A DNA stretch of 64,000 nucleotides from positions 9,731-73,730 of the forward strand of contig NIVC01003852.1 of the NCBI GenBank assembly GCA_002269645.1, in the 5' to 3' direction. The stretch's first letter is position 1. Each line of letters opens with the position of its first letter. Position numbers and translations under genes: made by a program. This stretch comes from Macrostomum lignano (lineage: Eukaryota). Shown here one piece after another: positions 4,083-60,600 of this stretch. The notes under the pieces are model-generated. The model ran no database searches and was not told the origin of the DNA. It saw nothing but the letters and a program-made list of their open reading frames with translations.

Positions 4083-9032
<4,950 letters not shown>

Positions 9033-22017: not shown

Positions 22018-23008
22018 GCAATGAATTGCAGAGACTACCATATATGAATTCATACATAAATCTTACATTAGAGATATAGCCAACCAAGTGTCGCATTAGA
22101 AGGTGGCACTAATACAAAAATAGTGCTTTAATGTTACAAGTAATGTTACATGTTACAAGATACAACAATAGGGTCAATAAATAGCAAAAAAATTGTTCTG
22201 TACTCATGTCCTCTCACCTTTCTAATCTTAACTATCTATCGACTAAGGTATAGTGAATTCTTTCAGGCTTTTAAGAAGCCTTATGAATTAGTTTGAAATT
22301 TAGGATTTTAAACATGTTTAAGCATGCAGGTACACCAATTGATTTCTTTATCTATGCAGGATGTAATCCATATAAAAAATCAATTGCTCCAAAAGGGAAT
22401 AGATATAATTCTATTCCCTAAGATATAATATATATTGGGTAATTGTTTTTTTTAAATACCCTAGAAAGTTTGTTAAAACCAAGGTCTACAACTTCATCAA
22501 CCAAAAGTTTAGCTTAAAACCAAACAAAGTACAATCAATTTTACTCTGCTATTTATTTGGGAAGCCATCCACATTAAATTTAAACAAAAACTTCAAAATG
22601 CTATCTATAAAACTAGCAAACTGACATTAACATAAACTTTTCTACTATGAAAGTTGGTCAATTTACTTAAATCCTCAAATGTACTATTTTTATGCCACAG
22701 TGTGCTAGTGTTATTTACAAATTTTTGTGTGTTGCTAAGCAGAGCCAGTTTTACATTGATAAACAGAATGACACCTATACATAAGAGTAAAGGAGCATTT
22801 CAAAAGTGTCTACTGTATATGATCACCTTCTTATATGCAACTAATATACCCAATGCAAGCATATTGACCAATTTAGTATTATTGACAACAGTACTAACTT
22901 TATAAGCATTGTATATAAAAGAGCTTAAACCTATCCTCAATAGCCAGATATTTAACAAAGGCACTAGTGTACATTTTAAGATTTTCTAACTTGTCTTTTC
23001 TTATTCTA

Positions 23009-30852: not shown

Positions 30853-32406
30853 ATGGCACTCCCTGGAGCTCAGCCGCTGGACTTGGCCTTCTCTTTCGAC
30901 ACGACCGGCTCAATGGGCTCCGTCATCAACGAGGTGCGCAGCAACATCGCCGAGATGCTGCAGCGGCTCACTACCGACATCCCGGACCTGAGCGTGGCTC
31001 TCATCGCTCACGGAGACTACGGGGACAAGTACGAGACGGAGATCCGCGACTTCGGCACCTCCACAGCGGACCTGGTGCGGTTCGCCAAGACTGTGCAGGG
31101 CACGTACGGCGGGGACGAGCCCGAGTGCTACGAGCTGGTGCTGCAGCAGGCCCGCACCCGCCTCAGCTGGCGCCCGCACAGCAGCCGCGCTCTGGTGCTG
31201 GTCGGCGACGCCTTCCCGCACGAGGTGGGCAGCGCCAGGAACAAGTACAAGATCGACTGGAAGGCGGAGACCGAGCTGTTGCACCAGCTGGGAGTCACCG
31301 TGTACTGCGTGCAGTGCGGCAGCGGCAGGAACTCGCAGAGCTTCATGGACCACGTCGCCAAGGTTACCGGCGGCCTGCGGCTCCCCCTGGCCGAGTTCCG
31401 GGGCGTTCGCGACTTCCTCATGGCCATCGCCTACCGGGAGGGCGGCACCGACGTCCTTCGCGACGGCTACGAGCGCGAGGTGCGCGCCAGGGACGGCGCC
31501 GCGCTGGCCGGCGACGTGAGCGCCATGCTGGGCCTCGTGCGCCGCTCGTCGGCGGTCACCCTGGCGGCCAGCAGCATCGCCGCCGACCCGTCCGGGGCAG
31601 TCACTGGGACAAAGACTGCGGCGAGGCGAACAAAGACTGCCAAAGCGGTGACCGCCGGAACTTCAGGAAAGGCGAAGAAGCCCGTCAGGAAGCCCGTCAC
31701 GAAGCCCGTCACGAAGCCCGTCACGATGCCCGCCAGGAAGCCCGTCACGAAGCCCGTCACGAAGCCCGTCACGAAGCCCGTCACGAAGCCCGCCAGGAAG
31801 CCCGTCACGAAGTCCGTCACGAAGCCCGTCACGAAGCCCGTCACGAAGTCCGTCATGGCAGCTGCGAGAATTTCGCGGGCGCGGGCTGCCAGGGCGGTCC
31901 GAACTCGCCGGGAGACCTGCTCCGACAGGCGCCTGCCCGCTGGGCTGGCCGCTCTCACCTGGTCTCCCTGGCGCTTGGTCGGTCAGCCCGGAAGCGTGTC
32001 CCGGTTGTCATGGCAACGCTTTGGAAGCGTCTCAGTGCGCAAGTCGCTGTTCAGTCGCGGCGGCGGTGGCGGCCAGCAAGTCGTGGAGCTCGCCGTGCAG
32101 CCGCGCCCCGGCGCCCGGCGCTTCCCGCTGTTCGGCCGCGTCCTCTCCGCCGGCAGCAGCCGACACCGCGGCGGCTTGCCGGTGGTCAGCGTGAAGAGGC
32201 TCCTGGCTGGCCGGCCGGCTGTCCGGGCCCAGCTTGAGCGGGTGCTGCGCCAGGGCATGCGGGTGTTCGCCAGGGTGGCCGACGCTGCTCCCGCGAGCCC
32301 GCGGCCCCGGCTGGCCAAGGCGGCGAGCTACGCGTGGAACAGCGGCCGCTCGGCGAGATGCGGCGGCGTCTTCGTGTCCGTGTCGGAGAGGAGCCTGCGC
32401 GGCTGA
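30853..32406 (+). CDS. Intronless vWA (MIDAS) domain protein with a basic KPVT-repeat linker and a possible degenerate GIY-YIG-like C-terminal domain, 517 aa
   Basis: [14 protein letters not shown] (DxTxS MIDAS), [15 protein letters not shown] and [10 protein letters not shown]. 12-bp coding repeats (KPVT/KPAR) at about 31680-31850. GC3-rich codon usage like neighbouring genes. Confidence 0.85.
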
Positions 32407-43560: not shown

Positions 43561-46194
43561 CTTCCTCGTCGGGGCTCATGTGCCGCTACCACCCTATCAG
43601 CCCGCTGCTGCCACCCGGAGCCGGCCGCCAGCTGGACTTGAAGCCCAAACAAAACACGCAGCGCCAACGCCAGGGTGCTAAATTTGTAGCAGTAAAGTGC
43701 GATGCGCCCGTCGCCCCCAGCTGAGCTTGTTATTCTTTTCTATGTACACAATTGGCACACATGTACACTAGATGTACATTCAGTGTGCGCAGAGCTACGT
43801 GCACTTCACTTAGATTGTCTTTGCGCTCAAAGATGAATGCTAATTAATGTTTGAGCACATTATTTTTGAAAGTATTCGATTCCCCCTCTTATTTGCCCTG
43901 CCCGCCCCAAATGCCATTTGATCGAATTTCCTCTGCAAGCCTCGCCTCTGTACCGAAGTCGGGCACAGGTCCTGTCGCTGTCATGCATATTTTTATACAA
44001 TGCTATTATTTGAGTTCCTTACCACCTGCTTAGCTGCTATTAACGCTATAAACGCAATGATGCGCTGCGGCCCGCACTGCACCTGATGCTATATGAATAA
44101 ACTAATTTTTAAAACTAATTCAATTCATACATTGCCACGTACAAAACTATTTCATGTTCTCGAACACAAGACATCACAGGCACTGTGAAAGCCACACTCA
44201 GCTCTGCAGCCTCCGTCATCATCAATTAATAGACTGCATGGCTGGCCGCACCTGGCGGCGCTCGAGAGCCGAGCAGCAGCAGCCGGAGGGCCCAGCCTCG
44301 AACCCCACGGAAGCCTGGGCGGGCGGAAAGAGGCTGGGATGGAGCTGCTGAATTATTGAGGCAGGCAGCAGTCAGCCAAGCTCTTGGCAACAGATGCTCA
44401 CCCCCCCATCCACCAGGCGTCTCTTGAGAGCGGCTCAGGGGGGGGGGCGCCCCGCTGCGCCAATTCTTACTTTGTGAGGTGCGGGCCCGAGACCGCAGGC
44501 TGATAAGTGACTGCTGGCGGGACCGGGGGCGGCGGCACGGGGCGGGGCTGCCAGGCAGCTCGAATTCTTCGAATAAACTGCGCGCGTCCCCCCGCCGGCT
44601 CTCCCGCGGGATTTTTTTCCCATGCAACTCGAGCCGCTTCTTGCCGCTGCCCGGGCCTCCCCCCCCAGCTGGGCAATGAAATTGAAGCCGCCGCTGCTGC
44701 ATTTTGCATGACACCCGACGGCTGACTCGAAAATCAACCGTCCTCGAACAACTCGCGTAGAGACGCGCAGGGGGGCGCCTCAAGTGCAGACTTGAGCACT
44801 GCGGCTCTGCAACAGGCGGACAGGCCGGCTGGTTGGCCCGGCCATGCAAAACTCGCAGCTGGCCGGGAAAGTGGGAAGCAGAAGCGCATAGAGAGGATGA
44901 TGAAGGAGCTGCCGGAGGAGGCTGGATCGGATGGGGATCGATTTTTTGGCACTGGCGCCGGACTCGCGGGGCTGGCGGGGAATATTGACACGCCGGCCGG
45001 AGTGAAGAGCCCCCTTCCCAGCAGAATAACTGGGCTGGGGAAAATGCTCCCAGTGCTCCCAGCTGCCTACCGCGGCTTCATTAAAGCCGGCAGGCCCGCA
45101 CCAGCCAAGCCGCTGGCCGATCGCACGGGGCCGCATAGGTGAGACCGGGAGGCAGGCATGGCTGAACCAGACAGGGGAGCCGAGGGGCTGGAATCGGGAG
45201 GCCGGGGGAGCGGCTTTCTAATGAACTGCCTGAGCCCGCCCGCGCCAGAGCGCCCGGTCCGTCCCAAATTGGGGAGCTGCAAGGCGCTGCGGGGACACAG
45301 GGGGGGGGGAGACAGTTGAAGAGATCTCCCATGCTTTCTGAGCCCGGCCGAGCGAGGGGCAAATTAGGCGGCCGGGCCTGCGAGCGGAAGATGGACTGCG
45401 GGGCAGCGGGTGGATGCGGGGGATTAGCGAGCCAGCCAGGGGAAAATAGTAGGGATTGAGCAGCAGGGATTATGAGATAAGCGCGGATAAAATGGGTGCC
45501 AAACAGACCGGGGGAAGCCGGGAGGTCAGCAGCAGCCCCGCAGACTCCCAGCCGGGGGGGAAAGAAGGATCTCCCGGGCATCCGCAGCGCTGCAAAAGTG
45601 CACGCCCGGGCTGGGAGATGCAGATGCGTATTTGAGAAGGCCGGGCCGTGCAGAGAGCAGCTGTCAGTCAGTGGAGCAGAGAAGAAGGGAAGGGCGCTGA
45701 GCGCCGGTCAAGGAGAATGAGTGCTCAAACCAGAGCAGTCCAGCGCCTGTTCCGCAACCAGCGATTTATCAACGGCTCTCATGAGTTGATCAATAGTATG
45801 AGAGCCGGGCCTGGGGCTCAATACTCATTTTACCGCAGCCCGGAGCGCTAAAGGTCTCCGTGTGCTTCAAATTCCCTTTGCAAAAAACAAAGTCAGAGAA
45901 CGAGCTGTGTGAGCAGTGAATTAATTTTTCAATTAAAATGTATTGGCTGCAACAAGAAATCCGTAATGTACGATCTGCCTGAGAAAATCTAAAAACAAAA
46001 ATATTTCTTCCATATCTGACGTGACAAAAATTGCACAAGAAGTTGGAGAATCAGGACTAAATGATATAATATAACTTTTGATGGCATTGAAATATTGGGA
46101 CGGCAGTGCCCCCCACCCCCTGCAAAATTATTTGGCAGGCAATTGCCCACACTGTCCCCCACGGCTCCGCTGCGCCTGTGTAGCAGCGAGATCC

Positions 46195-47322
46195 TCCCCC
46201 ATAAACTGGCGGCACCGGAATCTCCCCCATAAACTGGCGGCACCGGAATCTCCCCCATAAACTGGCGGCACCGGATTCTCCCCCATAAACTGGCGGCACC
46301 GGAATCTCCCCCATAAACTGGCGGCACCAGAATCTCCCCCATAAACTGGCGGCACCAGAATCTCCCCCATAAACTGGCGGCACCGGAATCTCCCCCATAA
46401 ACTGGCGGCACCGGAATCTCCCCCTCCCTAGACTGGCGGCACCGGAATCTCCCCCTCCCTAGACTGGCGGCACCGGAATCTCCCCCATAAACTGGCGGCA
46501 CCGGAATCTCCCCCTCCCTAGACTGGCGGCACCGGATTCTCCCCCTCCCTAGACTGGCGGCACCGGAATCTCCCCCTCCCTAGACTGGCGGCACCGGAAT
46601 CTCCCCCTCCCTAGACTGGCGGCACCGGAATCTCCCCCTCTCTAGACTGGCGGCACCGGATTCTCCCCCTCTCTAGACTGGCGGCACCGGATTCTCCCCC
46701 TCTCTAGACTGGCGGCACCGGATTCTCCCCCATAGCCTGGCACCGGAATCTCCCTCCCATAGCCTGGCACCGGAATCTCCCCCCCCCATAGACTGGCACC
46801 GGAATCTCCCTCCCATAGACTGGCACCGGAATCTCCCTCCCATAGACTGGCACCGGAATCTCCCTCCCATAGACTGGCACCGGAATCTCCCCCCATAGCC
46901 TGGCACCGGAATCTCCCCCCATAGACTGGCACCGGAATCTCCCCCCATTTCATAGATTGGCGGCACCGTAATCTCCCCCCATAGCCTGGCACCGGAATCT
47001 CCCCCATAGCCTGGCACCGGAATCTCCCCCCCCATAGCCTGGCACCGGAATCTCCCCCCATAGCCTGGCACCGGAATCTCCCTCTCATAGCCTGGCACCG
47101 GAATCTCCCCCATCTCATAGATTGGCGGCACCGGAATCTCCCTCTCATAGCCTGGCACCGGAATCTCCCTCCCATAGCCTGGCACCGGAATCTCCCTCCC
47201 ATAGACTGGCACCGGAATCTCCCCCCATAGACTGGCACCGGAATCTCCCCCCATAGACTGGCACCGGAATCTCCCTCCCATAGACTGGCACCGGAATCTC
47301 CCCCCATAGACTGGCACCGGAA
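46195..47322. repeat. 25-30-bp minisatellite downstream of the helicase stop
   Basis: Unit GCACCGGAATCTCCCCCATAAACTGGCG grading into variants. Confidence 0.94.
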
Positions 47323-47409
47323 TACACCTAGATTGAGATCTTCATCTCCACAGGAAGCTCACTAGTCAATGGGATGGCAAGTCAGGGTGCAGCGGCTGGC
47401 GGCCCCAGT

Positions 47410-50400
47410 TCAGCTGCAGCCTCCCTGCCTGGCGGCCAGCAGCCGCACAGCCTGCAGCAGGTTGGCCTCCCCGGCCAGCAGGTCTTGCAGCCGCTGTCTC
47501 TCCTCGGCGGAGCGGCAGTACACAAGGCAGCGGCCGGCGTCCACCCGGACCCGGCCCCGAGACTGCACCAGCGCGGCCACCCGCGAAGGCGGATCGGCCA
47601 GCACCAGCAGGTCGCAGCGGGGCAGGTCGAGGCCCTCGCAGGCGATGGGCGTGGCAACCAGCGCGTTGGCCTCGCCTCTGGCCACCGAGTACAGCAGGCG
47701 GCGCTGCTGCGCCACCGACATGCCGGCGTCTCCAGCGGCGCCGTGCCCGATCAGGCAGGCCGGGCGGAGGTCGGCGAAGTCAGCAAAGGCCGAGTGAGAG
47801 GCCAGCAGATCGGCGAGGCGGCGCGCAGTGGCGCGTTCGCGCACGATCACCAGCGCCAGTCTGGCACCCCCGGTGCCGCGCAGGTCGTCGGCCAGGGCGC
47901 GCAGCACCGAGCCAGCGCCGGCAGTGGCGGCCTGGCCTTCGCGCAGGAGCTGCAGCGCATCGACAAGCGCCTCCGCGCTCTGGCGCATCTCGGTCAGCAG
48001 CTCCCGCGACAACAGCGACGACAGAGCGGCGTCGTCCAGCTCGGCGACCAACTGGCGGGAGTCCCCGCAGACGGCCAGGCCCAGGGCGCTGCGCAACTGC
48101 GAGGGTAGCGGTATTCACCCACTTATTCACTGCCCCGATTCACCCACTTATTCACTGCCCCGATTCACCCACTTATTCACTGCCCCAATTCACCCACTTT
48201 TTCACTGCCCCGATTCACCCACTTATTCACTGCCCCAATTCACCCACTTATTCACTGCCCCAATTCACCCACTTATTCAATGCCCCAATTCACCCACTTA
48301 TTCACTGCCCCAATTCACCCAATTATTCACTGCCCCAACTCACCCACTTATCACTGCCCAATTCACCCACTTATCACTGCCTAATTCACCCACAATATTT
48401 ACTGCCCAATTCACCCACTTATTCGCTGCCCCAATTCACCCACTTATTCACTCACCTCGCTCAGTCTCCGCAGCTGCTCAACCAGGAGGCGCACCGGTTG
48501 GCTGTCGGCAGTCCGCTCGGCCACCTCGTCCAGCACGCCGGCCAGATTCGGACAGTCGAGCCCGCCATTGCTCAGCAGCTGGTTTACCAGTAGGGCGGCG
48601 TCGGACGCCCCGGATGCTTCGGCAGCCTTCCGCAGGGCGGTGAGCACCAGGGCGGAGTGGTTGATCAGGGCGGCCACCGCGGCCGTCTCCTCCGTCAGCG
48701 GCGGCACGAGTCGGCCAGAGATGCCCGCTCGGACAGAAAACTCGGCTAGCTGAGCCTGGGCGTCCGGCGAGCTCGGCCAGGCCAGTCTAGCGCCGCCCAG
48801 TCTGTCCAGGAGGCCGACCAGCATCTCCTGAGTGGCCGGCAGTGAGGCCTGCGAGGGCGGGCGAATTTTGATAATAAAAGATTTAGATGCCTGCAGGAAA
48901 AATAGTGAGAACTTGCGGAATGCTACTATTAGTAATATAACCTTAGCTTTTGGGTTCGGGTATTGTCACTGACACTGACAGTCAATTGTCACTGACAGTC
49001 AATTGTCACTGACAGTCAATTGTCACTGACAGTCAATTGTCACTGACAGTCAATTGTCAAAGACTGCACCAAGAACAATTCAAACCTGGCCGGCTGGCGA
49101 GGCGGTGAATCCCAGCAAGCGAGGCGACTTCAGCTCCGGCATGCTGAGCACTTGGCCGGCCAGCAGCGAGTACGGGTGCAGGGCGTCGCAGTGGTGCGCC
49201 TCGTCCATGGCCAGCAGGCAGGCCTGGTCCAGGCGCAGCGCCCCGGTGCGCAGGCAGTTGGCGTAGAAAGCGGCGGTGGTCACCACCAGGTCGGCTGCGG
49301 CCAGCGGCTGATCGTCAGGCAGGCTGTGCAGGTCGCCGCAGACCGCAGCCACGGCCAGCGACCGCGTCACCGTCGGGGTTGGCAGGGCTGGCGACGATGG
49401 CGGAGGCAGCGGCCGGAAGAAACGGCGCATGCGAACCTGCGGGAGCAGTGGGGCCCTGTCACTCAGTCACTGGGAAACTGCCCAGCCCTGTCACTCAGTC
49501 ACTGGGAATCTGCCCAGCCCTGTCACTCAGTCACTGGGAATCTGCCCAGCCCTGTCACTCAGTCACTGGGAATCTGCCCAGCCCTGTCACTCAGTCACTG
49601 GGAATCTGCCCAGCCCTGTCACTCAGTCACTGGGAATCTGCCCAGCCCTGTTACTCAGTCACTGGGAATCTGCCCAGCCCTGTCACTCAGTCACTGGGAA
49701 TCTGCCCAGCCCTGTCACTCAGTCACTGGGAATCTGCCCAGCCCTGTCACTCAGTCACTGGGAATCTGCCCAGCCCTGTCACTCAGTCACCAGACATCTG
49801 CTCAGCCCTGTCACTTAGTCAGCAGGAAACCGCCCAGCCCTGTCACTCAGTCAGCAGGAAACCGCCCAGCCCTGTCACTCAGTCCCCAGGAAACCGCCCA
49901 GCCCTGTCACTCAGTCCCCAGGAAACCGCCCAGTTCTCCCAGACCTGAGCCAGCTGAGCCCGCAGGAAGGCGGCCTGCTGCAGCACCAGCAGCACCTTGT
50001 CCACCAGGAACACGGCACTACGGAGCGGATTCGCCTCCAGTGCTGCCAGAATGGCCAGGGCGGCCACCATCGTCTTGCCCGTGCCGGTGGGCAGCACACA
50101 CAGCGCGTTGCCATGGCGACAGCAGAGACGGTACGCCTCCAGCTGGTAAATGCGCGGCCTCAGCTGGGTCGGCCAGTCGGTCCGTGGATTGGCGACGAAC
50201 TCGCACGCTGGCGCCTGTCGGTCCGGCGCCGGACAGCGGACCGCCAGACGGCGCCGATGATCGCGGCCGGCGACGTGAGCCGCCACGTTGTTTCCATGGA
50301 GACGGATGCCGCAAAGGTTGCACAACGAGTAGCCGTCAGGCAGCTGAACAACGGGCTGATAGCTGGCTGCGCGGTGGTACAGGGGTGCGGGCGCAACTGG

Positions 50401-52709
50401 TGAACAGGGTGGCCCGAGCTCTTACTCAGTCCCACCCTAGCCCTACTCAGTGCCACCCGAGTCCCTCAGTCCCATCCGAGTCCCTACTCAGTCCCACCCG
50501 AGTCCCTACTCAGTCCCACCCGAGTCCCTACTCAGTCCCACCCGAGTCCCTACTCAGTCCCACCCGAGTCCCTACTCAGTCCCACCCGAGTCCCTACTCA
50601 GTCCCACCCGAGTCCCTACTCAGTCCCACCCGAGTCCCTACTCAGTCCCACCCGAGTCCCTACTCAGTCCCACCCGAGTCCCTACTCAGTCCCACCCGAG
50701 TCCCTACTCAGTCCCACCCGAGTCCCTACTCAGTCCCACCCGAGTCCCTACTCAGTCCCACCCGAGTCCCTACTCAGTCCCACCCGAGTCCCTACTCAGT
50801 CCCACCCGAGTCCCTACTCAGTCCCACCCGAGTCCCTCAGTACTCAGTAACTCTCTTGAATCCCACCTCGAGTCCATCTTAAGTTCCACTTAAGTCCCAC
50901 CTGTCCCATCCGAGTCCCTCCTGAGCCTCACCTGAGTACCGTTTGAGTCCCTCTTGAGGATAATCATATTTTGCGCGTCACATGGTGCTCACCAGCCTGC
51001 AAGTCCGGCTCCGGCCCAGCCCGATCGGTCGCTGCGGCTGGCTGAGTGATGCCCGAGACGCGCAGCCGCTTCAGATGATTTTTGCCTTGCTTGTGGTTCA
51101 GCATCTGGTCCGGCGTGTTGCACTGCACATTGCACACAGTGCAGCGCAGCATGCCGTTAGCCTGGGATTCAACTAGCGGCTGGGCCTGGCCTGCCGCTTG
51201 ATGGGGAACAGCGGAACCGGATAAGGCTGCGGAGCCTGCGGAGGGCGAGACTGCGGAGGGCGAGGCTGCGGCGTTGAAGCCCCCGGAGGGCGAGGCTGTG
51301 GCGTTGAAGCCAGCGGAGGGCGAGGCTGTGGCGTTGAAGCCAGCGGAGGGAGATGCTGCGGCGTTGAAGCCTGCCGAGGGCGAGGCTGCGGCGTTGAAGC
51401 CCGCGACAGTTGATGAAACGCCGACAGAGCTGGAAGTTGATGAAGATAAGCGGCTGACATCGATGCCCCAGGTAGCCAGGTTGATTGGCGAGGCGCATTT
51501 GCCGTTCAAGTCGAAATTCAGTCCCAGCGTTGATGCACTCCTAATTGCGCTTTGTCTCTGTGAGCCTCCGCCTGCGGCAGCCGGCGCAACCGAGTCTGCA
51601 GGCCGCTGCTGGGGCGGAACTGATTGCGGCGACACTGCAGATGAAGATGAAGAGGCTGCAGATGAAGACGGGGAGGCTGCAGATGAAGACATATGTGAGG
51701 CTGTAGCTGCCGCTCTCCTGGCCTTATTCTTATGTGGCCGGCCATTCCAGTGGTCGGCCAGGTTGCTCATGCTGGTGGCAAAGGTGCCGCAAAGATTGCA
51801 GCGGTAGCGGCCCTCCGATTCAAATTGAAACCAGGGACTGGAAAGGATCTCGCTGTGCAGCTGCGGCTGTTGGACAGGTGGCACGGGCTGGCTGGCGGGT
51901 TGCAAAGGCTGTCTCTCAGGTTGCACGGGCTGGCTGACTGGTTGCACGGTTTGGCTGACTGGTTGCACGGTTTGGCTGACGGATTGCACAGTCTGGCTGG
52001 CGGGTTGCACAGTCTGGCTGGCATACTGTAGTGAGGGCAGCGGCGACTGGCTGACTTGAGCGGCGGGGTGAACCGACATCAGAGAGAATTCGTCAGTTAG
52101 CGAGGCCACAGCGATCCGCGCCGAGTGGTTGGGAATCGAATTGGGAGCAGCAGCGGCGGCGGCGGCAGCTTCGAGGTTGGGAACCAGCGGCTGGGTGGAA
52201 GACGCGGCTTGCTGCTGCTGGTTCCCAGGCAGCACAATCGACGAACTGGTTTCGGAGGCGTCAAAAGCCAGTGAGGGAGCGCCGACGCCAGCCCTGACGA
52301 CGGCATTCTTGTGCCCCCGGCCCTGGAAATGCGAGGCCAAGTCGCTTTTGGACGTGGCGTGGATATTGCAGAGGTCGCACCAGTACCAGACGACGCCGCC
52401 GCCGCGGTCCTCCTGCCGGACATGCTCGGCGGAATTTCTCACGTATTCGAGAGCCTCCGGCATCTTCAGCCGCCGCTGGTGCGCCTGGCCGCGGCAGTGG
52501 GCCGCCAGGCTGGCCTCAGAGTTGCAGGCCACGTCGCAGATGAGGCAGCAGAAGGCCTCGCCAGCGGGCTCGGCATGCAGCGCCCGGCTGACGGCCCGCT
52601 GGTGCGGCCGGCCGCTCAGGTGGTCGGAGCGGTGAACTGCGGACGTGAAGGTCACGCCGCACAGGTCGCAGCGGTTACTGTTGACCTGATTCTGCAAGCG
52701 GTACAGCAT
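47410..52709 (-). CDS. Six matrin/JAZ-type C2H2 zinc fingers fused to a RIG-I/Dicer-like SF2 DExH helicase, 1199 aa
   Basis: Exons 52709-50993, 50396-49945, 49436-49086, 48848-48456 and 48096-47410 sum to 3600 nt with compatible phases (1,0,0,0). Five C-x2-C-x12-H-x5-H fingers plus one x11 finger. Helicase motifs PRIYQLE, LPTGTGKT, DEAHH, HPY, GFTASP, LVATPIACEGLDLP and QSRGRVR. Confidence 0.88.
48113..48450. repeat. 25-bp minisatellite in helicase intron
   Basis: Unit TATTCACTGCCCCAATTCACCCACT. Confidence 0.93.
48965..49058. repeat. 17-bp quasi-palindromic repeat in helicase intron
   Basis: Unit GACAGTCAATTGTCACT, about 5 copies. Confidence 0.88.
49453..49932. repeat. 32-bp minisatellite in helicase intron
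   Basis: Unit GCCCTGTCACTCAGTCACTGGGAATCTGCCCA. Confidence 0.94.
50423..50840. repeat. 22-bp minisatellite in helicase intron
   Basis: Unit CTCAGTCCCACCCGAGTCCCTA. Confidence 0.95.
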
Positions 52710-52944
52710 GCGGGCTTTATAAAACTAGCTTGCCTGGTAGCAGCTCAAGGACCATTTGGAGTAGAAGACCGAGTGCGATTAGGAGTAGCAAGGGCTGAAC
52801 TTCATTTCCTAGAAAATTATTGGAGACAGGCTTTTCTGAGCACCAAAAATACGTTTTTTAAAAGCTAGAATATACAATTTTCAAAGCCAGTTTTCAAACG
52901 TTTAAAAAACAAATCATATGGCTCTGCATTTACTCGTAAGAGCC

Positions 52945-53236
52945 ATTGATCTTCTATTCCTAGTGGTCCTTGATCTTCTATTCCTAGTGGTCCTTGATCT
53001 TCTATTCCTAGTGGTCCTTGATCTTCTATTCCTAGTGGTCCTTGATCTTCTATTCCTAGTGGTCCTTGATATTCTATTCCTAGTGGTCCTTGATCTTCTA
53101 TTCCTAGAGGTCCTTGATATTCTATTCCTAGAGGTCCTTGATATTCTATTCCTAGAGGTCCTTGATATTCTATTCCTAGTGGTCCTTGATCTTCTATTCC
53201 TAGAGGTCCTTGATATTCTATTCCTAGTGGTCCTTG
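52945..53236. repeat. 24-bp minisatellite between TUBGCP2 and the helicase gene
   Basis: Unit CTTGATCTTCTATTCCTAGTGGTC. Confidence 0.94.
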
Positions 53237-53848
53237 AGACGGGGCCTGACAGTGGCAGGCTGATTAGATAGTAAATATTTTCCAGTCCATTAACTTGCTA
53301 GATCGCCCTCCACGGATTACAGTCCTTGCTGAATCAGCCCTGCCAATGTACGCTGCCGGGGCGCATGGGGTGGCTGTGCGGACCGGCCAGCTCCCCAGAT
53401 GCAAAGTACAGTGTGTGCGTACAGAGTGGCTAATCTGGCCTGCCCAATTGGAATAAATCAAGTAGCAGCAGAAAGGCAAATATTTCCTGACTGAATTGGC
53501 CGGCAAAAATAGGAGAAGCGAATCGCGCGCCCTGATTACGGACACAATGTACTTTATAAAGTTACGGCAGAACAGAGTACAAAAATAGTTCAGCTGTAAG
53601 CGAAATGATAGAATATTTTAGACTACTCATTATTATCACAAAGCAAACAAATTACATTATATGGAACTATTAATTTTGGCAACACACTAAGAATGTCAAT
53701 CATTAATAAATTAAACTAAATGTCAATAAGAGACAAGCATATAAAATTAGGAATACTTAACAGAGCAAACTAGAGCACCATGCGACAATGGGTTGCTTTT
53801 TAAAAGAGCAAAGTTACACAATGTGCTGACTGTTCAACTCCGGCCAGC

Positions 53849-54522
53849 CTAACTGGCAGCCACATAGAAGTAGTTGTAGTTCAGCCTGTAGATGAGGTTC
53901 ATCAGGTTGAGACGCTGATTCGAGCAGTGCTCAGCGATGGCCTCAATCAGCTGTTTGAGCAGGCCGCTGAAGTTAGCCGAGAAAGTCTCCACGGTGGCGG
54001 CGAGGTCGGCGGACTCAGCGGAGCCACCGTGCCTGGCGATGCAGTTGCAGAAGGTGACGCAGACGGCCAGCAGTTTGTACAGCAGCTTGAGCAGGTCCGG
54101 CTGCTGCAGCATGCAGTCCGACAGGCAGGAGGTCAGCATGTGCGAGTGCCGCTCGATCAGCTCGTCCAGGTTGCCCACCCTGCAAGCGTTGATAAATTTA
54201 AATGCTTCAATCAGAGCCTGACCGTCTGCTTTCCTAGAAATCTTGGCTGTTTGGGCACCAGTTTGAATTTCTGGGCACAGGACAAGACAAAGATGGGAAT
54301 GAAGGCCAATCCAAGCAAGACACATGAGCCAGGGGAAACTGAAAGCGCATGCCTAAGATGGATGCTCATCCGCTGAATAATCAATAATCAAGAGTCACGA
54401 GTCTGCTGGAACCTAAAGATCGCTAGCTGTGTAGGTCTGGCAATACAGGAAAAAACAGACAGACAGACAGACAGACATACAGACAGACATACAGACAGGC
54501 AGACAGACAGGCAGACATACAT

Positions 54523-54565
<43 letters not shown>

Positions 54566-54578
54566 GGCAGACAGACAT

Positions 54579-54613
<35 letters not shown>

Positions 54614-57600
54614 TACAGACAGACAGACAGACAGACAGGCAGACAGACAGGCAGGCAGACATACAGACAGACAGACAGGCAGACAGACAGACAGGCAGGC
54701 AGACATACAGACAGACAGACAGGCAGACATACAGACAGGCAGACAGACAGGCAGACAGACAGGCAGACAGACAGGCAGACAGACAGACAGACAGGCAGAC
54801 AGGCAGACAGGCAGACATACAGACAGGCAGACAGACAGGCAGACAGACAGATAGGCAGACAGGCAGACAGGCAGACAGACAGACAGACAGGCAGACAGAC
54901 AGGCAGACAGACATACAGACAGACAGACATCCAGACAGACAGACAGACAGACAGACAGACAGGCAGACAGACAGGCAGACAGACAGACAGACAGACAGAC
55001 AGGCAGACAGACAGGCAGACAGACATACAGACAGACATCCAGACAGACAGGCAGACAGACAGAAAGGCAGACAGAATAGGGAAATTGGCCTGGTAGGAAC
55101 TCATCGGACTGTGAAGGCCAACCCACTAAGCCCAGCCTGTACATGCCTAGCCAGGGCCTCTGCACACCCCGTATGCGGTATGCGTGTGCCTGCTGTGGCA
55201 GGGAAAATGGCCTAAACGCTAACGGCAGCCCCGCAAAGCAGAGAAGCAGACTCACTTATCCAGCTGCGTCCACAGCCGGTGCCAGGCGGGCTCAATGACC
55301 TCAAATGTCATGTAGTACTCCAGGTGCTGCACAAAGGTGAGCATCTGCTGGCGAAGCGCGTAGGCGGAGGTGACGCTGGCCCGGTTGCGGTGCTGCTGCA
55401 GCCACACGGAGCCCAGCAGGCGCTCCACGTGCCGGCAGTAGAAGAGGTGGCGGAACAGCATCTGGTAGCGCGTGATGGCCCGCCTGTTAATGAGGAGGCT
55501 GAGCGGGAAGTCGACCTCAATGTCCAAGCTGAAGGCTTCAAGGGCGGTGAGCCGAGCAGCGGCGGTGGCATCGGGGGCGGCCTCTCGCAGGCTGACCAGC
55601 GCCAGCATCTGGCCGATGAGGTCGTGGGGCAGCAGCGCCACCCGCAGGCGGTCCCGGTTGGGATCGGGACCGGCAGCGCTGGTCCGCACCGCTGTCTCCA
55701 GCAGCGACTCCAGCCGGTTGAGGGAGACCCGGCCGGCCTCGCGGCGCATCTCGGAGTCAGCGAGGTCCATGAAGTGCACAAGGAAGTCGCTCTGGTCCAG
55801 CAGGAAGAACCGCTTCAACGAGCACAGAAGGTCGCGCAGGCCCTTCTCACGCAGCAGCCGCATGAGCAGGGCGGCGGCCTTGGCGTGGGCGCTCTCCAGC
55901 TGCTCAACGTAGCGCCCGCCCTCGTAGGCGTAGACCAGCTCCTCGGCCGGATAGTCCAGCAGCGCCTCGCCGCACTGCGCCACCACGTTGAGGTATTTTC
56001 CCGTGCTCAGCACCTTCTCCGCCATCGGCCACAGGAAGCTGGGCACCCGCTGGCTGCACAGCTGGTAGCGATTCTCCCAGTAGTCGCTGTGGAATGTGTT
56101 CGGGGGGTGTCTGCTTGCCAGCCTGGGTTCAGGACGCGAACTACTGGTAGCGAAATACTACTCGGTTTTAGCGTAAATGATTGGCCCTCGCTACTTGTGT
56201 AGGCAGTATGTTATGCATTCTACTGTCATTTCTACTGCTTGGACGCTGTCTGTCTTAGTGCCTGGTCTGTCTAAGTGTCTGCCTTAGTGTCTGCCTTAGT
56301 GTCTGCCTGTCTGTCTTAGTGTCTGCGTGTTTCTGTCTTAGTGCTTGCAGGTCTGTCTGTCTGTCTGTCTGTCCGAGATGGACAGTCACAATAAGATAGA
56401 CAGTGCTTAGTCTGCATGCCTGCCTGTCTCAAGGCTCGTTCACACAGCCATAGAACAGCGCGATTCGCTTGATCACACAGGTTTCGTACTGTACAAATCT
56501 GTACATCAAATACTGGCTTCGTGCATAAGCTGTGTGATTCGATGACCGCGTGAGCGAGTCTTCAGCAGCCACCAGCTACCAGCAGCCCGGCTGAAGATGC
56601 TGACACATGATACCTAATGCTTCAGCAAGTCAAAACAATCCAGTCGAGCACGCACTTGATGTACTCTCTGGTGAGCACCTCCTTAGACGTGGCGGTGTTC
56701 TCGGTGACCATGAACTCGGAGTAGGGGTCGAGCACGCGGCCCCGGTAGACCCAGGTCTGCAGCATGTCGAAGAAGGGCCGACTGGCCGCCTTTGTCAGGT
56801 GCAGCAGCAGGCGGTGCCGCTTCGGGTCGCCGGCCGAGGCGCAGGCTTTGTCGTGCAGCAGCGAGAGCACGGAACCGCCCAGGCACTCTCCCTGGTTGAC
56901 GTCGTGTGCGATCTCGGCCAGGGTCTCCAGTACGCGGGCCGGCTCCTGCAGGCAGCAGTGCAGCCGGTGCAGCCGCAGCTGCCCGATCCGCTGCTGGTGC
57001 TCCAGCTGGCAGACAAGGACGCCGAGATCCCTGCAGGGAGGTGGCATGGACAGGTTAGTGGAGCCCTTTGTTTAGCAATCTGAGGCTGTGAATGCTCTCA
57101 AGATTAAAGCCCTAAGAATCTCCTCTTTTTACATTGCAATTCCCAAATCTCCCCTGAGATGGAGCCCCCAAATCTCCGCTGAGATAGAATCCCCAAATCT
57201 CCCCCGAGATAGAATCCCCAAATCTCCCCTGAGATAGAATCCCCAAATCTCCCCCGAGAGGCTGAGATAGAACCCCAAAATTTCCCCTGAGATAGAATTT
57301 CCAAATCTCCCCGAGATAGAATCCAAATCTCCCCAGAGATGAAATCCAAAATCTCCCCTCGTCCCCTGAGATAGAATCCCTAAATCTACCCTGAGAGGCT
57401 GAGATAGAACCCCAAAATTTCCCCTGAGATAGAATCCAAATCTCCCCAGAGATGAAATCCAAAATCTCCCCTCGTCCCCTGAGATAGAATCCCTAAATCT
57501 CACCAAAGATGGAATACCAAAATCTCCCATGAGATTGAATTCCCAAACCTGCCCTCTTCCCTTGAGATAGAATCTCCAAATCTCCCCGAAGATAGAATCC

Positions 57601-60600
57601 CAAAATCCTCCCTAAGAAAGAATCCCTAAATCTTCCATGAGATTTAATTCCCAAATCTCCTCTCGTCCCCTGAGATAGAATCCCTAAATCTCCCCGAAGA
57701 TAGAATCCCAAAATCCTCCCTAAGAAAGAATCCCTAAATCTTCCATGAGATTTAATTCCCAAATCTCCTCTCGTCCCCTGAGATAGAATCCCTAAATCTC
57801 CCAGGAGATGGAATCTCCAAATCTCCCCTGAGATAGAATCCCCAAATCTCCCCGAAATAGAATCCCCAAATCTCCCCTGAGATAGAATCCCCAAATCTCC
57901 CCCGAAATAGAATCCCCAAATCTCCCCTGAGATGGAATCCACAAATCTCCTATTAGATGGAAATCCCAAAATGTGCCACTCGATAGACATAAAAAATTTT
58001 CCATTTCCAGCCCAAATTGGCACACGGACCCGCACCAGCCTCACCTGAGCAGGGCAGTGATGGAGCCGCTGAGGGCCTGGTTCACCATGCCGTACTCATA
58101 GGCAGCTTTGTCCTCGGCGAAGCGGGTCACATCGGAGCGGTGGCTGCAGACGGGCAGCAGCTGGCCGAGCATCTCCAGCCGGGTGGCGTCCAGGCTGTTG
58201 TCGACATCGAAGCCGCGCCTGTCGGCCCGAGAGGCGAGCGGACGAGGCACAACGAAGGAGCCCTGGATGGGGAGGGGTGGCGGCGTTCAGCTTGCAGCTC
58301 GCGAAACACAGGACTTTCACGCCTTCGTTAATTGAACTCTGATTGCTTGGACAGCAGTTCTACTCCAGACCGGACAGACCCTAGGCCTAGAACTTCATGG
58401 CTGCTTGGACAGCAGTTCCCCTCCAGACCCTAGGCCTAGAACTTTATGGCTGCTTGGACAGCAGTCCCCCTCCAGACCCTAGGCCTAGAACTCCATGGCT
58501 GCTTGGACAGCAGTCCCCCTCCAGACCCTAGGCCTAGAACTCCATGGCTGCTTGGACAGCAGTTCCCCTCCAGACCCTAGGCTTGGAACTCCATGGCTGC
58601 TTGGACAGCAGTTCCCCTCCAGACCTTAGGCCTAGAACTCCATGGCTGCTTGGACAGCAGTCCCCCTCCAGACCCTAGGCTTGGAACTCCATGGCTCAGA
58701 CCAGCCCAGCTACCTCAACTCCGCTAAGCAGGGAGAGCACGTCCTGAATGATCAGCTGCTCCTGCGCCTCGACCGGGTAGACCCCGATGCTGGGAGTCAG
58801 GCGGCGCGGCGGATCGTCCAGGACAAAGTCGCTGGACAAGAACGGCCGCTCGTAGAGCCAGTCCGGCTGCCACGGCACTTCGGCGGGCTCCGAGGCCGGC
58901 GTCTTCTGGCGCAACGGGCCGGCCACTGACGAAGGCAGCGAAGAGTCCGTCGGCCGCTGACGCGCTTCGGCGTTCATGTGGGAGGACAGCGCCGCCACGT
59001 TCAGCCGGGATGTGGAGCCGGCTGGCGCGCCGACGGCTGTCTGGGGGCGCCTTGGCTGCGCGGCGGCGCTGCCAGCGGAAGTCGGCAGCTGAACGGGACC
59101 GGCGATGGCCTCCAAAGTGCGCTGAGTGGCCGGGTCGCGCTTGATGCGGGACAGCAAATCTACGAACGGGTCCAGCTCCTTCACGCTGGGGAGGCGGGGA
59201 GCGGGAGGCGCAGCTTGCAGAAACAAGAGAGTCGGCAAGGTGCAACTGACCGTACGGGCAATCGCGCTTCAACCCGACTCTTGGACTGCCGTGGCTAGTT
59301 TCACAATCTTGGGACTCTGATAGCAGGAGACCCCGACTGAGGGTCTGGGAGTAACTGGTATGGGGGAGGCTTTGGGCACTCGTAGAAGCAAGCAGTCCTT
59401 GCCCATTTCACTGATTCCTAAACACGCACAAGGATGCGTACGCACATATGCACTCGAACAGGGTGTACAGATTATCGTCAGCAACTGAGGATCTGGGACT
59501 CTGGGAGGGATGGCGGTGGCCCCAGCAACTGAGGATCTGGGACTCTGGGAGGGATGGCGGTGGCCCCAGCAACTGAGGATCTGGGACTCTGGTAGGGATG
59601 GCGGTGGCCCCAACAACTGAGAATCTGGGACTCTGGCAGGGATGGCGGTGGCCCCAACAACTGAGGATCTGGGACTCTGGCAGGAATGGCGGTGGCCCCA
59701 ACAACTGAGGATCTGGGACTCTGGCAGGGATGGCGGTGGCCCCAACAACTGAGGATCTGGGACTCTGGGAGGGATGGCGGTGGCCCCAACAACTGAGGAT
59801 CTGGGACTCTGGAGGGATGGCGGTGGCCCCAGCAACTGAGGATCTGGGACTCTGGGAGGGATGGCGGTGGCCCCAGCAACTGAGGATCTGGGACTCTGGG
59901 AGGGATGGCGGTGGCCCCAGCAACTGAGGATCTGGGACTCTGGGAGGGATGGCGGTGGCCCCAGCAACTGAGGATCTGGGACTCTGGGAGAGATGGCGGT
60001 GGCCCCAGCAGCTGAGGATCTGGGACTCTGGGAGGGATGGCGGTGGCCCCAGCAGCTGAGGATCTGGGACTCTGGGAGGGATGGCGGTGGCCCCAGCAGC
60101 TGAGGATCTGGGACTCTGGGAGGGATGGCGGTGGCCCCAGCAGCTGAGGATCTGGGACTCTGGGAGGGATGGCGGTGGCCCCAGCAGCTGAGGATCTGGG
60201 ACTCTGGGAGGGATGGCGGTGGCCCCAGCAGCTGAGGATCTGGGACTCTGGGAGGGATGGCGGTGGCCCCAGCAGCTGAGGATCTGGGAGGGTGGTGGTC
60301 CAGTCTAACGATCTGGGCGAGCAGGCACCAGCAGAGCAGCACCAGCTTACTTTTTAATCTTAAGCTCCTCATATTTGCGGTTGAACTCCTCGGCATGCGG
60401 GTTGTTGTCGCTGATGATCCGCTTGGCCCGGTGAGCGTCGGCCTGGAAGATTTCCTGGTTGTCAGGATTCGAACTCGAGACCTCATCAAATTCAGAACTC
60501 TCTAAGACTCACCAACAGCGATTGCGTGTTGGGGCGGACGGAGCGCTCCAGCAGGTCAATGTAGGTGTCCAGTTCCACGCTGGGCTTGTCCGCGCCCAGT

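What the first reader, a model, noticed from the sequence alone, without database searches (positions are those of the whole stretch)
47410..52709. RIG-I/Dicer-like helicase with six N-terminal dsRNA-type zinc fingers and no CARD, CTD or RNase III: candidate novel dsRNA sensor
Seen: the 1717-nt zinc-finger exon ends at a phase-1 GTGAG donor. It joins in frame (G+TT) to an exon that holds a sixth finger directly ahead of the helicase Q-motif, so this is one 1199-aa protein. Walker A, DEAH, TAS and motif VI are intact, and translation stops right after Hel2. Known: C-x2-C-x12-H-x5-H fingers (JAZ/ZNF346, ZNF385/Wig-1, ZFR) bind dsRNA. RLRs normally use CARDs plus a C-terminal domain, and Dicers carry PAZ/RNase III. 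Inference: the fingers may replace the CTD for dsRNA capture in an antiviral or small-RNA pathway. I do not recognise this architecture from characterised proteins.
Basis: partly seen in the sequence, partly recalled or inferred. Interest (0 to 1): 0.85.

Follow-up and report, generated by a model that had tools for sequence, protein, structure and literature searches.

The report
Zinc-finger Dicer/RIG-I-like helicase in a flatworm
This is a real, intact flatworm gene joining six RNA-type zinc fingers to a Dicer/RIG-I-like helicase; it belongs to an old, almost unstudied animal gene family whose planarian member is switched on by double-stranded RNA stress.

Summary
On the minus strand, five GT-AG exons (52709-47410) encode about 1,190 aa: six zf-met/JAZ-type fingers, then a DExH helicase with intact ATPase motifs, ending about 45 aa after motif VI. 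There is no CARD, RIG-I CTD, PAZ or RNase III.

The organism is Macrostomum lignano. An RNA-seq-based GenBank model of a colinear sister locus also fuses fingers and helicase.

The architecture is not unique. It defines a monophyletic family in sponges, cnidarians, molluscs, hemichordates, crinoids and flatworms. All members are uncharacterised or auto-named "RIG-I-like" or "Dicer-like". Montipora coral members add a Z-alpha domain. The Schmidtea member is the published prlr3, which rises about 3-fold on ADAR knockdown; that paper never mentions its fingers.

Sequence, fold and tree place the helicase in the Dicer/RIG-I group. It lies outside both the RLR and Dicer clades, and FANCM is its most distant relative.

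The most likely function is a dsRNA-binding, ATP-driven accessory or sensor helicase of the dsRNA response or RNAi. This is untested. I file it as a new variant of a known kind.

The parts
47410..52709 (-).
   Evidence: model, all introns GT-AG; Pfam; 87% identical M. lignano protein P0001; colinear sister locus
50993..52709 (-). Exon 1: fingers 1-5 separated by long low-complexity linkers; ends at a phase-1 G|GTGAGC donor
52691..52693 (-). AG (52693-52692) of a probable spliced-leader acceptor 'ttgcag'; 52691 is the first base of the mature mRNA in the transcript-based sister model. The SL ends in ATG, in frame with AAT CAG
   Evidence: P0001 model starts right after ttgcag; annotation cut at trans-splice sites; SL ...TTGCATG
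52602..52670 (-). Zinc finger 1 (CDLCGVTFTSAVHRSDHLSGRPH)
52479..52547 (-). Zinc finger 2 (CLICDVACNSEASLAAHCRGQAH)
52311..52379 (-). Zinc finger 3 (CDLCNIHATSKSDLASHFQGRGH); best zf-met match
51732..51800 (-). Zinc finger 4 (CNLCGTFATSMSNLADHWNGRPH)
51075..51143 (-). Zinc finger 5 (CTVCNVQCNTPDQMLNHKQGKNH); best zf-C2H2_jaz match
50397..50992 (-). Intron 1, filled by a 22-bp x19 tandem array. An alternative in-frame acceptor ends it at 50367, so exon 2 then starts at 50366
49945..50396 (-). Exon 2: finger 6, conserved PAP..R linker, R-x-YQ-x-E motif, Walker A, motif Ia
50257..50322 (-). Zinc finger 6 (CNLCGIRLHGNNVAAHVAGRDH, x11 spacing), about 80 aa before Walker A as in the relatives checked
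50071..50085 (-). Helicase motif I / Walker A (GTGKT)
   Evidence: invariant in family alignment
49086..49436 (-). Exon 3: rest of Hel1, with DEAH (49205-49194) and TAS (49106-49098)
48456..48848 (-). Exon 4: end of Hel1 and first part of the helical insertion
47878..48695 (-). Hel2i-like all-helical insertion (aa ~892-1044), interrupted by intron 4 (48455-48097)
   Evidence: AF2 helices 310-462 of the 617-aa query; full-length structural matches to RIG-I/MDA5/LGP2/ancestral Dicer helicase
47410..48096 (-). Exon 5: end of insertion, Hel2 with motif V (ATPIACEGLD) and motif VI QSRGRVR (47565-47545), one long C-terminal helix, stop TGA 47412-47410

Best explanation
The locus encodes a member of an ancient animal family of zinc-finger helicases. 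The family is a separate branch of the duplex-RNA-activated ATPases, the group that holds the Dicer helicase and the RIG-I-like receptors.

**Shown here.** The gene is intact, spliced and under purifying selection. It has six zf-met/JAZ (U1/matrin-type) C2H2 fingers on flexible linkers, then a Hel1-Hel2i-Hel2 core with all ATPase motifs, and nothing after the helicase.

**Inferred.**
- The finger array supplies non-sequence-specific affinity for A-form dsRNA. This is the job done by the CTD in RLRs and by dsRBDs in the closest non-animal relatives. The last finger is held at a fixed distance in front of Hel1.
- The helicase clamps the duplex and hydrolyses ATP, translocating on or remodelling dsRNA-protein complexes.
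- With no CARD or nuclease of its own, it acts through partners. It would work as an accessory or regulatory sensor in the antiviral or endogenous-dsRNA response or in RNAi, in the manner of LGP2, DRH-1/3 or Dictyostelium HelF.
For: **Gene and domains.**

**Transcript support.** The GenBank model P0001 of the colinear sister locus is 87% identical and fuses fingers and helicase. The Mlig_3_7 annotation behind it is RNA-seq-derived.

**Selection.** dN/dS between the two copies is 0.25 overall, 0.045 in the fingers and 0.30 in the helicase.

**Helicase class.**
- The single sequence hits AncD1D2 at 1e-24, Hef at 7e-22, RIG-I and LGP2 at about 1e-17, and FANCM at 6e-12.
- The family profile covers Hel1-Hel2i-Hel2 in one stretch. 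It scores AncD1D2 268 bits, RIG-I 223, MDA5 212 and FANCM 138.
- The AF2 model has pLDDT 83 and pTM 0.76, with a 150-aa helical insertion.
- The Foldseek top 50 are all RIG-I, MDA5, LGP2, ancestral Dicer, DRH-1 or Dcr-2.

**Family.**
- The same architecture occurs in sponges, Nematostella, corals, molluscs, hemichordates and crinoids.
- The family is monophyletic at 94.5% bootstrap.

**Functional context.**
- The nearest outgroups are helicases fused to 1-4 dsRBDs (Amoebozoa) or to RdRP.
- Montipora members add a Z-alpha domain at 40 bits, against a cut-off of 21.
- The Schmidtea member is prlr3 (dd_Smed_v6_5587_0_1). It is 2.7-3.0-fold up on ADAR knockdown and serves there as a dsRNA-response marker (PMC8797187).
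Against: - No member has been tested for RNA binding or ATPase activity.
- zf-met/U1-type fingers also occur in nuclear splicing and RNA-processing proteins, and they can bind protein or ssRNA.
- Motif V of the window protein (ATPIACEGLD) departs from the family consensus (ATSVAEEGIDLP).
- The Nematostella and one coral-type member have degenerate ATPase motifs, so ATPase activity is not universal in the family.
- Induction on ADAR knockdown is correlative, and it comes from another flatworm order.
- The tree is neighbour-joining. It has a fragmentary Hef outgroup, no FANCM and no modern animal Dicer. Deep nodes are weak (45-75%).
Confidence: 0.6

Rival explanations
1. Split-Dicer cofactor. 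The protein supplies in trans the dsRNA-translocating helicase that flatworm and lophotrochozoan Dicers have lost. It would work bound to Dicer/Argonaute in siRNA production rather than as a signalling sensor.
For: - The best single structural-sequence match is the ancestral Dicer helicase.
- In the tree the family groups with the amoebozoan dsRBD-helicases and the RdRP-fused helicases. These lineages carry the Dicer-type helicase on a protein other than an RNase III Dicer.
- Published surveys report that flatworm Dcr-1 lacks most of the helicase (PMC5594548).
- They also report that lophotrochozoan DICER2 lacks it (PMC11114477).
Against: - The family also exists in sponges, cnidarians, hemichordates and crinoids. 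A link to Dicer helicase loss is therefore not established, and I did not examine the Dicers of those animals.
- No interaction data exist.
- Schmidtea dicer1-2 appears to keep an N-terminal helicase: its transcript start in S6 Table encodes ..TRDYQIEIYNKA..NTGSGKTFIA (my reading).
Confidence: 0.2
2. Housekeeping nuclear RNA-processing helicase. The U1/matrin-type fingers target it to snRNA/pre-mRNA or rRNA duplexes, and it has no role in immunity or RNAi.
For: - Weak Pfam matches of the fingers in this protein or its relatives to zf-U1 and SF3a60_Prp9_C.
- zf-met fingers are common in nuclear RNA-binding proteins (general knowledge).
Against: - No vertebrate, arthropod or nematode appears among the named family members. 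Most hits are unnamed.
- Finger number varies from 1 to 13.
- Z-alpha has been gained in corals.
- The planarian member is induced by dsRNA stress.
- These traits fit a defence-type gene better than a core processing factor.
Confidence: 0.12
3. FANCM/Hef-type DNA translocase acting on branched DNA.
For: Archaeal Hef scores well (7e-22; 193 bits), and the superfamily is shared.
Against: - FANCM is the weakest of the related structures: 138 bits, against 268 for the Dicer helicase.
- No Hef or FANCM appears in the Foldseek top 50.
- Pfam finds no ERCC4, HhH or MHF-binding region.
- The fusion partners across the family and its neighbours are all RNA-related: dsRBD, RdRP, Z-alpha and zf-JAZ.
Confidence: 0.03
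4. Annotation artefact: the finger exon and the helicase are two separate genes, or this copy is a pseudogene.
For: - The exon 1-exon 2 junction was not checked against reads for this copy.
- Intron 1 is a tandem-repeat array.
Against: - Finger 6 and Walker A share one ORF.
- The RNA-seq-based model of the sister locus joins the exons.
- Multi-finger plus helicase is the rule in more than 30 relatives.
- The ORF is intact, with dN/dS 0.25.
Confidence: 0.05

Closest known systems
Schmidtea mediterranea prlr3 (dd_Smed_v6_5587_0_1; Bar Yaacov 2022, PMC8797187)
   Same: - Same family and architecture: four zf-met-type fingers, then ..PRKYQLEIYEKA..FLPTGTGKT..FLVDKVLLVMQQ.
- The last finger has the same unusual x11 spacing and the I(K/R)(I/L)H.NN signature.
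- hhalign against the family profile gives E 6e-36.
- It is the only member with any experimental data. It is up 2.7-3.0-fold on adar1/adar2 RNAi.
   Different: - It is shorter: 825 aa, four fingers, short linkers.
- It was treated as a divergent RLR. The word 'zinc' does not occur in the paper's main text.
- Its protein is mislabelled PRLR1 in that paper's S1 Table.
- No knockdown phenotype is reported for prlr3 itself.
[quoted passage not shown]
   Same: - Hel1-Hel2i-Hel2 core.
- Full-length structural alignment at TM about 0.6, E 1e-23.
- Family-profile scores of 196-223 bits for RIG-I, MDA5 and LGP2, and 156-165 bits for DRH-1.
- Like LGP2, it has no CARD.
   Different: - No RIG-I_C-RD/CTD.
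- Only one C-terminal helix where RLRs have a two-helix pincer plus CTD.
- N-terminal fingers instead.
- It falls outside the 100%-supported RLR clade.
Dicer helicase domain (best match: resurrected AncD1D2, PDB 9mw6)
   Same: Highest sequence score of any solved structure: 1e-24 for the single sequence and 268 bits for the family profile. AncD1D2 is described as a dsRNA-translocating ATPase (abstract of bioRxiv 10.1101/2025.02.15.638221, listed).
   Different: - No DUF283, PAZ, RNase III or dsRBD.
- Outside the Dicer clade, which has 96.5% support.
Amoebozoan dsRBD-helicases (Polysphondylium, Cavenderia and Balamuthia proteins; Dictyostelium HelF-like) and RdRP-fused Dicer-type helicases
   Same: - They are the nearest helicases outside the family, at E 1e-40 to 1e-32.
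- They form the sister grouping in the tree, at 57-75% support.
- They show the same logic: a free Dicer-type helicase joined to a dsRNA-binding or RNAi module.
   Different: - They use dsrm domains or an RdRP rather than C2H2 fingers.
- They are not animal proteins.
- The HelF identity of these proteins rests on my memory of the literature and was not tested here.
JAZ/ZNF346, ZFR, ZMAT3/Wig-1 and ZNF385 dsRNA-binding zinc-finger proteins
   Same: - Same finger type: C-x2-C-x12-H-x5-H with H-x2-G-[KR]-x-H.
- zf-met scores 92 bits and zf-C2H2_jaz 59 bits.
- The fingers are widely spaced on long linkers.
   Different: Those proteins have no enzymatic domain. dsRNA binding by these particular fingers is untested.

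Membership tests
RIG-I-like receptors (RLR) | SF2 DExD/H core with intact motifs I, II, III, VI | tested here: met
   GTGKT, DEAH, TAS and QSRGRVR are present. Pfam finds ResIII/DEAD and Helicase_C.
RIG-I-like receptors (RLR) | Helical Hel2i insertion between Hel1 and Hel2 | tested here: met
   The AF2 model has an all-helical block at residues 310-462. Alignments to RIG-I, MDA5 and LGP2 span 570-610 columns. The profile match runs in one stretch across the insertion.
RIG-I-like receptors (RLR) | C-terminal zinc-binding regulatory domain (RIG-I_C-RD) | tested here: not met
   No Pfam hit. The protein ends about 45 aa after motif VI, and nearly all 21 relatives measured end about 50 aa after it.
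RIG-I-like receptors (RLR) | Placement inside the RLR clade | tested here: not met
   In the NJ tree, RIG-I plus LGP2 form a clade at 100% that excludes the zinc-finger family. Sampling was limited.
Dicer | RNase III pair, PAZ/platform, DUF283 | tested here: not met
   No Pfam hit. No RNase III signature appears in the zinc-finger relatives.
Dicer | Helicase placed inside the Dicer helicase clade | tested here: not met
   AncD1D2 plus fungal DCLs form a clade at 96.5% without the family. AncD1D2 is nevertheless the best-scoring solved structure.
FANCM/Hef DNA translocases | Closest helicase similarity to FANCM/Hef, plus ERCC4/HhH or MHF-binding regions | tested here: not met
   FANCM scores 138 bits and is the lowest of the related structures. 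It is absent from the Foldseek top 50. Pfam finds no such domains.
zf-met / zf-C2H2_jaz (dsRNA-type C2H2 fingers) | C-x2-C-x12-H-x5-H spacing and a Pfam score above the curated cut-off | tested here: met
   Five fingers have x12 and one has x11. zf-met scores 92.4 bits against a cut-off of 21.2, and zf-C2H2_jaz scores 58.9 against 22.6.
zf-met / zf-C2H2_jaz (dsRNA-type C2H2 fingers) | Binding to A-form dsRNA | not testable with these tools
   Needs EMSA or filter binding with recombinant protein.
Animal zinc-finger helicase family (prlr3 type; my working definition) | Last finger about 80 aa before Walker A, then a PAP..R linker; protein ends about 50 aa after motif VI; helicase monophyletic with the family | tested here: met
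   invariant C16, C19, H31, H37 plus the helicase motifs; 94.5% bootstrap.
Duplex-RNA-activated ATPases (functional class) | ATPase stimulated by dsRNA | not testable with these tools
   Needs an ATPase assay with or without dsRNA, ssRNA and dsDNA.

The most novel reading that the evidence does not exclude
Animals have a third ancient lineage of Dicer/RIG-I-type dsRNA-activated helicases beside Dicer and the RLRs. It dates back at least to the sponge-bilaterian ancestor and was not seen here in vertebrates, arthropods or nematodes. It captures RNA with an array of zf-met fingers, plus Z-alpha in corals, instead of a CTD or dsRBD. It acts as a dsRNA-response sensor or effector, and in flatworms and molluscs it may supply in trans the helicase that their Dicers have lost.
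Probability: 0.3. Interest if true: 0.8.

Novelty: new variant of a known kind. Interest (0 to 1): 0.65.

Why it matters
RLRs and Dicer are currently treated as the two animal branches of dsRNA-activated helicases, and ideas about how antiviral sensing began rest on them.

A third conserved branch with a different RNA-capture module has been missed for two reasons. Surveys define RLRs by the C-terminal domain. The standard model animals also do not appear among the family's named members.

If it binds dsRNA, three things follow.
- It shows that the helicase core has been paired repeatedly with interchangeable dsRNA readers: CTD, dsRBD, zinc fingers and Z-alpha.
- It gives a candidate sensor or RNAi cofactor in molluscs, corals and flatworms, including aquaculture species and two regeneration models where knockdown is routine.
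- It makes the role of the 'free' Dicer-type helicase directly testable.

Tried and rejected
**Searches that led nowhere.**
- The full-length protein search returned only one hit, because the low-complexity linkers swamped the word filter.
- The search with the 15-sequence alignment returned nothing and wasted one of three searches. A majority-consensus query then worked.
- The first bootstrap tree, using Biopython distances, timed out. I redid it with my own Kimura distances.
- Literature searches for Mlig026361, LOC116604124, 'zf-met + helicase + Dicer' and SMART/Pfam domain names found no description of the architecture.
- The systematic lophotrochozoan RLR survey never mentions zinc fingers.

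**Readings rejected.**
- FANCM/Hef DNA translocase.
- Canonical RLR: no CTD, and outside the RLR clade.
- Dicer fragment: no RNase III, the transcript-based model ends at the same stop, and the family-wide C-terminus matches.
- Pseudogene or chance ORF (Pfam E 1e-26; dN/dS 0.25).
- The ZF protein being PRLR1, the knockdown target that rescues adar1 lethality. Primers and transcript tables show it is prlr3, so that phenotype cannot be claimed for this family.

Full report
**What is in the sequence**

The gene lies on the minus strand. An ORF runs from ATG 52709 for 1717 nt to a G|GTGAGC donor at 50993. Four further exons (50396-49945, 49436-49086, 48848-48456, 48096-47410) continue the frame through GT..AG introns to a TGA. 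Together they give 3600 nt, or 1199 aa.

Pfam finds zf-met (1.3e-26, five stretches), zf-C2H2_jaz (5e-16), ResIII/DEAD (aa 651-838) and Helicase_C (aa 1094-1154). It finds no CARD, RIG-I_C-RD, PAZ, Dicer_dimer or RNase III.

A regular-expression scan finds six fingers at aa 14, 55, 111, 304, 523 and 598. Five are C-x2-C-x12-H-x5-H and the sixth has x11. The scan also finds GTGKT (677), DEAH (801), TAS (834) and QSRGRVR (1149). Finger 6 and Walker A sit in one uninterrupted ORF.

**Organism and transcript evidence**

The only close database protein is a Macrostomum lignano hypothetical protein, BOX15_Mlig026361g1 (P0001). It is 1293 aa, partial, and 87% identical.

Its locus is NIVC01002499.1 in assembly Mlig_3_7. 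That locus is colinear with window 44000-58800 at 88-97% nucleotide identity, introns and the upstream gamma-tubulin-complex gene included. The two are alleles or recent duplicates in this hidden polyploid.

The GenBank annotation of that assembly was made from RNA-seq. It used StringTie and TACO, plus the TBONE pipeline, which cuts transcripts at mapped spliced-leader and poly(A) sites (PMC5730564). P0001 is thus indirect RNA-level evidence that fingers and helicase are one mRNA.

- P0001 joins exon 1 to the next in-frame acceptor. In the window this makes exon 2 start at 50366, 30 nt downstream of 50396, and removes VAPAPLYHRA.
- P0001 begins exactly after 'ttgcag', which is window 52691. 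The M. lignano spliced leader ends in ...TTGCATG (PMC8629364). That would give ATG-AAT-CAG in frame, so the true N-terminus may be M-NQVNS.

Comparing the two copies gives dN/dS of 0.25 overall, 0.045 in the fingers and 0.30 in the helicase, at dS 0.05-0.12. Both parts are under purifying selection, although the counts are small.

**The architecture is a family, not a singleton**

I ran an exhaustive phmmer search with the helicase part. After P0001, the next hits scored E 1e-69 to about 1e-44 at 31-40% identity. Most of them carry 1-13 fingers of the same type N-terminal to the helicase. Where present, the last finger sits about 80 aa before Walker A. Nearly all 21 relatives measured end about 50 aa after motif VI.

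Named members come from these groups:
- bivalves: Potamilus, Argopecten, Dreissena, Mactra, Mercenaria, Pinctada, Mytilus, Mya;
- gastropods: Haliotis, Aplysia, Lottia, Bulinus, Babylonia, Nucella, Plakobranchus;
- cephalopods: Octopus, Argonauta;
- hemichordates: Ptychodera, Glandiceps;
- crinoids: Anneissia, Antedon;
- sponges: Oscarella, Sycon, Corticium;
- cnidarians: Nematostella, Montipora.

All are 'uncharacterized' or carry automatic names such as 'RIG-I-like', 'DHX58-like' or 'Dicer-like'. Pfam confirms zf-met/zf-C2H2_jaz plus ResIII/DEAD plus Helicase_C in the ten complete models scanned.

No vertebrate, arthropod or nematode appears among the named members. Most hits are unnamed, however.

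Montipora capricornis XP_068758337.1 and related metagenome proteins add a Z-alpha domain ahead of the fingers. It scores 31-47 bits against a cut-off of 21.

**What kind of helicase**

- Against solved structures, the single sequence matches the resurrected ancestral Dicer helicase AncD1D2 best (1e-24). Then come archaeal Hef, plant DCL1, and RIG-I/LGP2/MDA5 (about 1e-17). FANCM scores 6e-12.
- A profile of 15 family members matches in one stretch across Hel1, the insertion and Hel2. The scores are AncD1D2 268 bits, duck RIG-I 223, MDA5 212, DCL1 210, LGP2 196, Hef 193, human Dicer 186, DRH-1 164, Dcr-2 148 and FANCM 138.
- AlphaFold2 with that alignment gives pLDDT 83.3 and pTM 0.76. The model has a 150-residue all-helical insertion and a single long C-terminal helix.
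- The 50 best Foldseek matches in the PDB are all RIG-I, MDA5, LGP2, ancestral Dicer helicase, DRH-1 or Dcr-2, at E about 1e-23 and TM about 0.6.
- I built a neighbour-joining tree from 41 sequences and 472 columns, with 200 bootstraps and Hef fragments as outgroup. The zinc-finger family, including the window protein, is monophyletic at 94.5%. The RLRs form a separate clade at 100%. Dicers (AncD1D2 plus fungal DCLs) form another at 96.5%. The family groups weakly (57-75%) with the amoebozoan dsRBD-helicases and the RdRP-fused helicases.

It is not FANCM-like, and it is a member of neither the RLRs nor the Dicers. The deep branching order needs a proper ML analysis.

**Link to published work**

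The planarian ADAR study (PMC8797187) named three 'planarian RIG-I-like receptors'. Its S6 Table gives the prlr3 transcript (dd_Smed_v6_5587_0_1, 2701 nt). Its ORF starts MDQCYSEK... and encodes four zf-met-type fingers followed by ..PRKYQLEIYEKA..FLPTGTGKT..FLVDKVLLVMQQ.

Two primers listed for that transcript translate into this protein. 'rig-I_F1' encodes AMHCSGS and 'rig-I_F2' encodes ETNKPSDIS.

hhalign of the available 399 aa against the family profile gives E 6e-36. The last finger shares the flatworm-specific x11 spacing and I(K/R)(I/L)H.NN signature with the window protein.

In that paper's S2 Table the transcript is 2.97- and 2.72-fold up after ADAR knockdown. Its best human hit, DDX58, scores only 2.5e-20. 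The canonical RLR-like prlr1 scores 1e-82.

The word 'zinc' does not occur in the paper's main text. Its S1 Table also labels the same protein PRLR1, which conflicts with S5 and S6. The prlr1 knockdown phenotype therefore cannot be credited to this family.

A systematic survey of lophotrochozoan RLR domain 'grafting' traced RLR phylogeny with the C-terminal RD and never mentions zinc fingers (PMC8998645). I found no paper that describes the architecture. I cannot exclude one outside the searchable library.

**How it most likely works**

Shown: the gene is intact, transcribed in the sister copy, conserved and under constraint. It has six RNA-type fingers on long disordered linkers, a complete Hel1-Hel2i-Hel2 ATPase core, and no output domain.

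Inferred from the families involved:
- zf-met/JAZ fingers bind A-form dsRNA without sequence specificity.
- An array on flexible linkers gives avidity for long duplexes.
- The conserved last finger and PAP..R linker place one RNA-binding unit next to Hel1.
- The core then clamps the duplex and hydrolyses ATP.
- With no CARD or nuclease, the output must go through partners. The protein would act as an LGP2-, DRH- or HelF-like accessory sensor or regulator in the dsRNA response or RNAi.

Several facts are circumstantial support:
- the nearest helicases are fused to dsRBDs or RdRP;
- the coral members carry Z-alpha;
- the planarian member is induced by endogenous dsRNA stress.

I put 0.6 on this general mechanism.

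A more specific version is that it supplies in trans the helicase missing from flatworm Dcr-1 and lophotrochozoan DICER2 (PMC5594548; PMC11114477). This is attractive, but the family also occurs in sponges, cnidarians, hemichordates and crinoids, whose Dicers I did not examine.

A nuclear RNA-processing role is the main non-defence alternative.

**Verdict**

The gene is not unique to this worm. It is a member of a conserved and essentially uncharacterised animal subfamily of Dicer/RIG-I-type helicases, so I file it as a new variant of a known kind. Interest is moderate to high for people working on the evolution of antiviral sensing and RNAi, and the two flatworm models make it directly testable.

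Noticed in passing
window 46196-47315, 48113-48452, 48973-49059, 49453-49916, 50423-50837, 52946-53237: Each of the four introns holds its own tandem array: 25 bp x13.8, 17 bp x5, 32 bp x14.5 and 22 bp x19. Further arrays lie just 3' of the stop (31 bp x39.5) and just 5' of the start (24 bp x12). The arrays differ in copy number between the window and sister locus L001.
   Followed up: partly
window 51253-51405 and 51873-52020 (exon 1): There are in-frame coding repeats in the inter-finger linkers: a 30-nt unit (AGFNAAASPS) x5 and a 21-nt unit (SQTVQPV) x7. The GFN repeat is about three times longer in the sister copy P0001, so linker length is evolving quickly.
   Followed up: partly
window 52691-52709: The genomic ATG at 52709 lies upstream of a 'ttgcag' acceptor. 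The transcript-based sister model starts right after that acceptor, and the spliced leader's own ATG would be in frame. The start codon may therefore be donated by trans-splicing.
   Followed up: partly
window ~54400-58800, minus strand: The same-strand upstream neighbour is a gamma-tubulin complex protein (GCP_N/GCP_C, 4e-48). In sister locus L001 the GCP gene model ends about 1.1 kb before the start of the helicase gene. The same neighbour is present there, so an operon is possible.
   Followed up: no
window 20755-22053 (-), 30853-32406 (+), 7992-9032 (+): Other long ORFs carry TPP_enzyme_N (2e-30), VWA (6.5e-06) and neurotransmitter-gated ion-channel transmembrane (1e-06) domains. These are ordinary animal genes, and I saw no immune gene cluster around the helicase.
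   Followed up: no
PMC8797187 supplementary tables S1, S5, S6: S1 Table labels the zinc-finger helicase protein (MDQCYSEK...) as PRLR1/dd_Smed_v6_3742_0_2. The primer table (S5) and transcript table (S6) show that it is prlr3/dd_Smed_v6_5587_0_1.
   Followed up: yes
L002 8001-11907 (ENA ERZ25073751) and P0258 (Montipora capricornis XP_068758337.1): Coral-type family members carry a Z-alpha domain before two fingers and the helicase. In L002, motifs V and VI look degenerate (ATNESEDCLD, QQTRRRG).
   Followed up: partly
P0194 (Nematostella vectensis LOC116604124): The cnidarian member has fingers and a DExH box, but my regular-expression scan found no GxGKT or QxxGRxR. It may be an ATPase-dead variant.
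   Followed up: no
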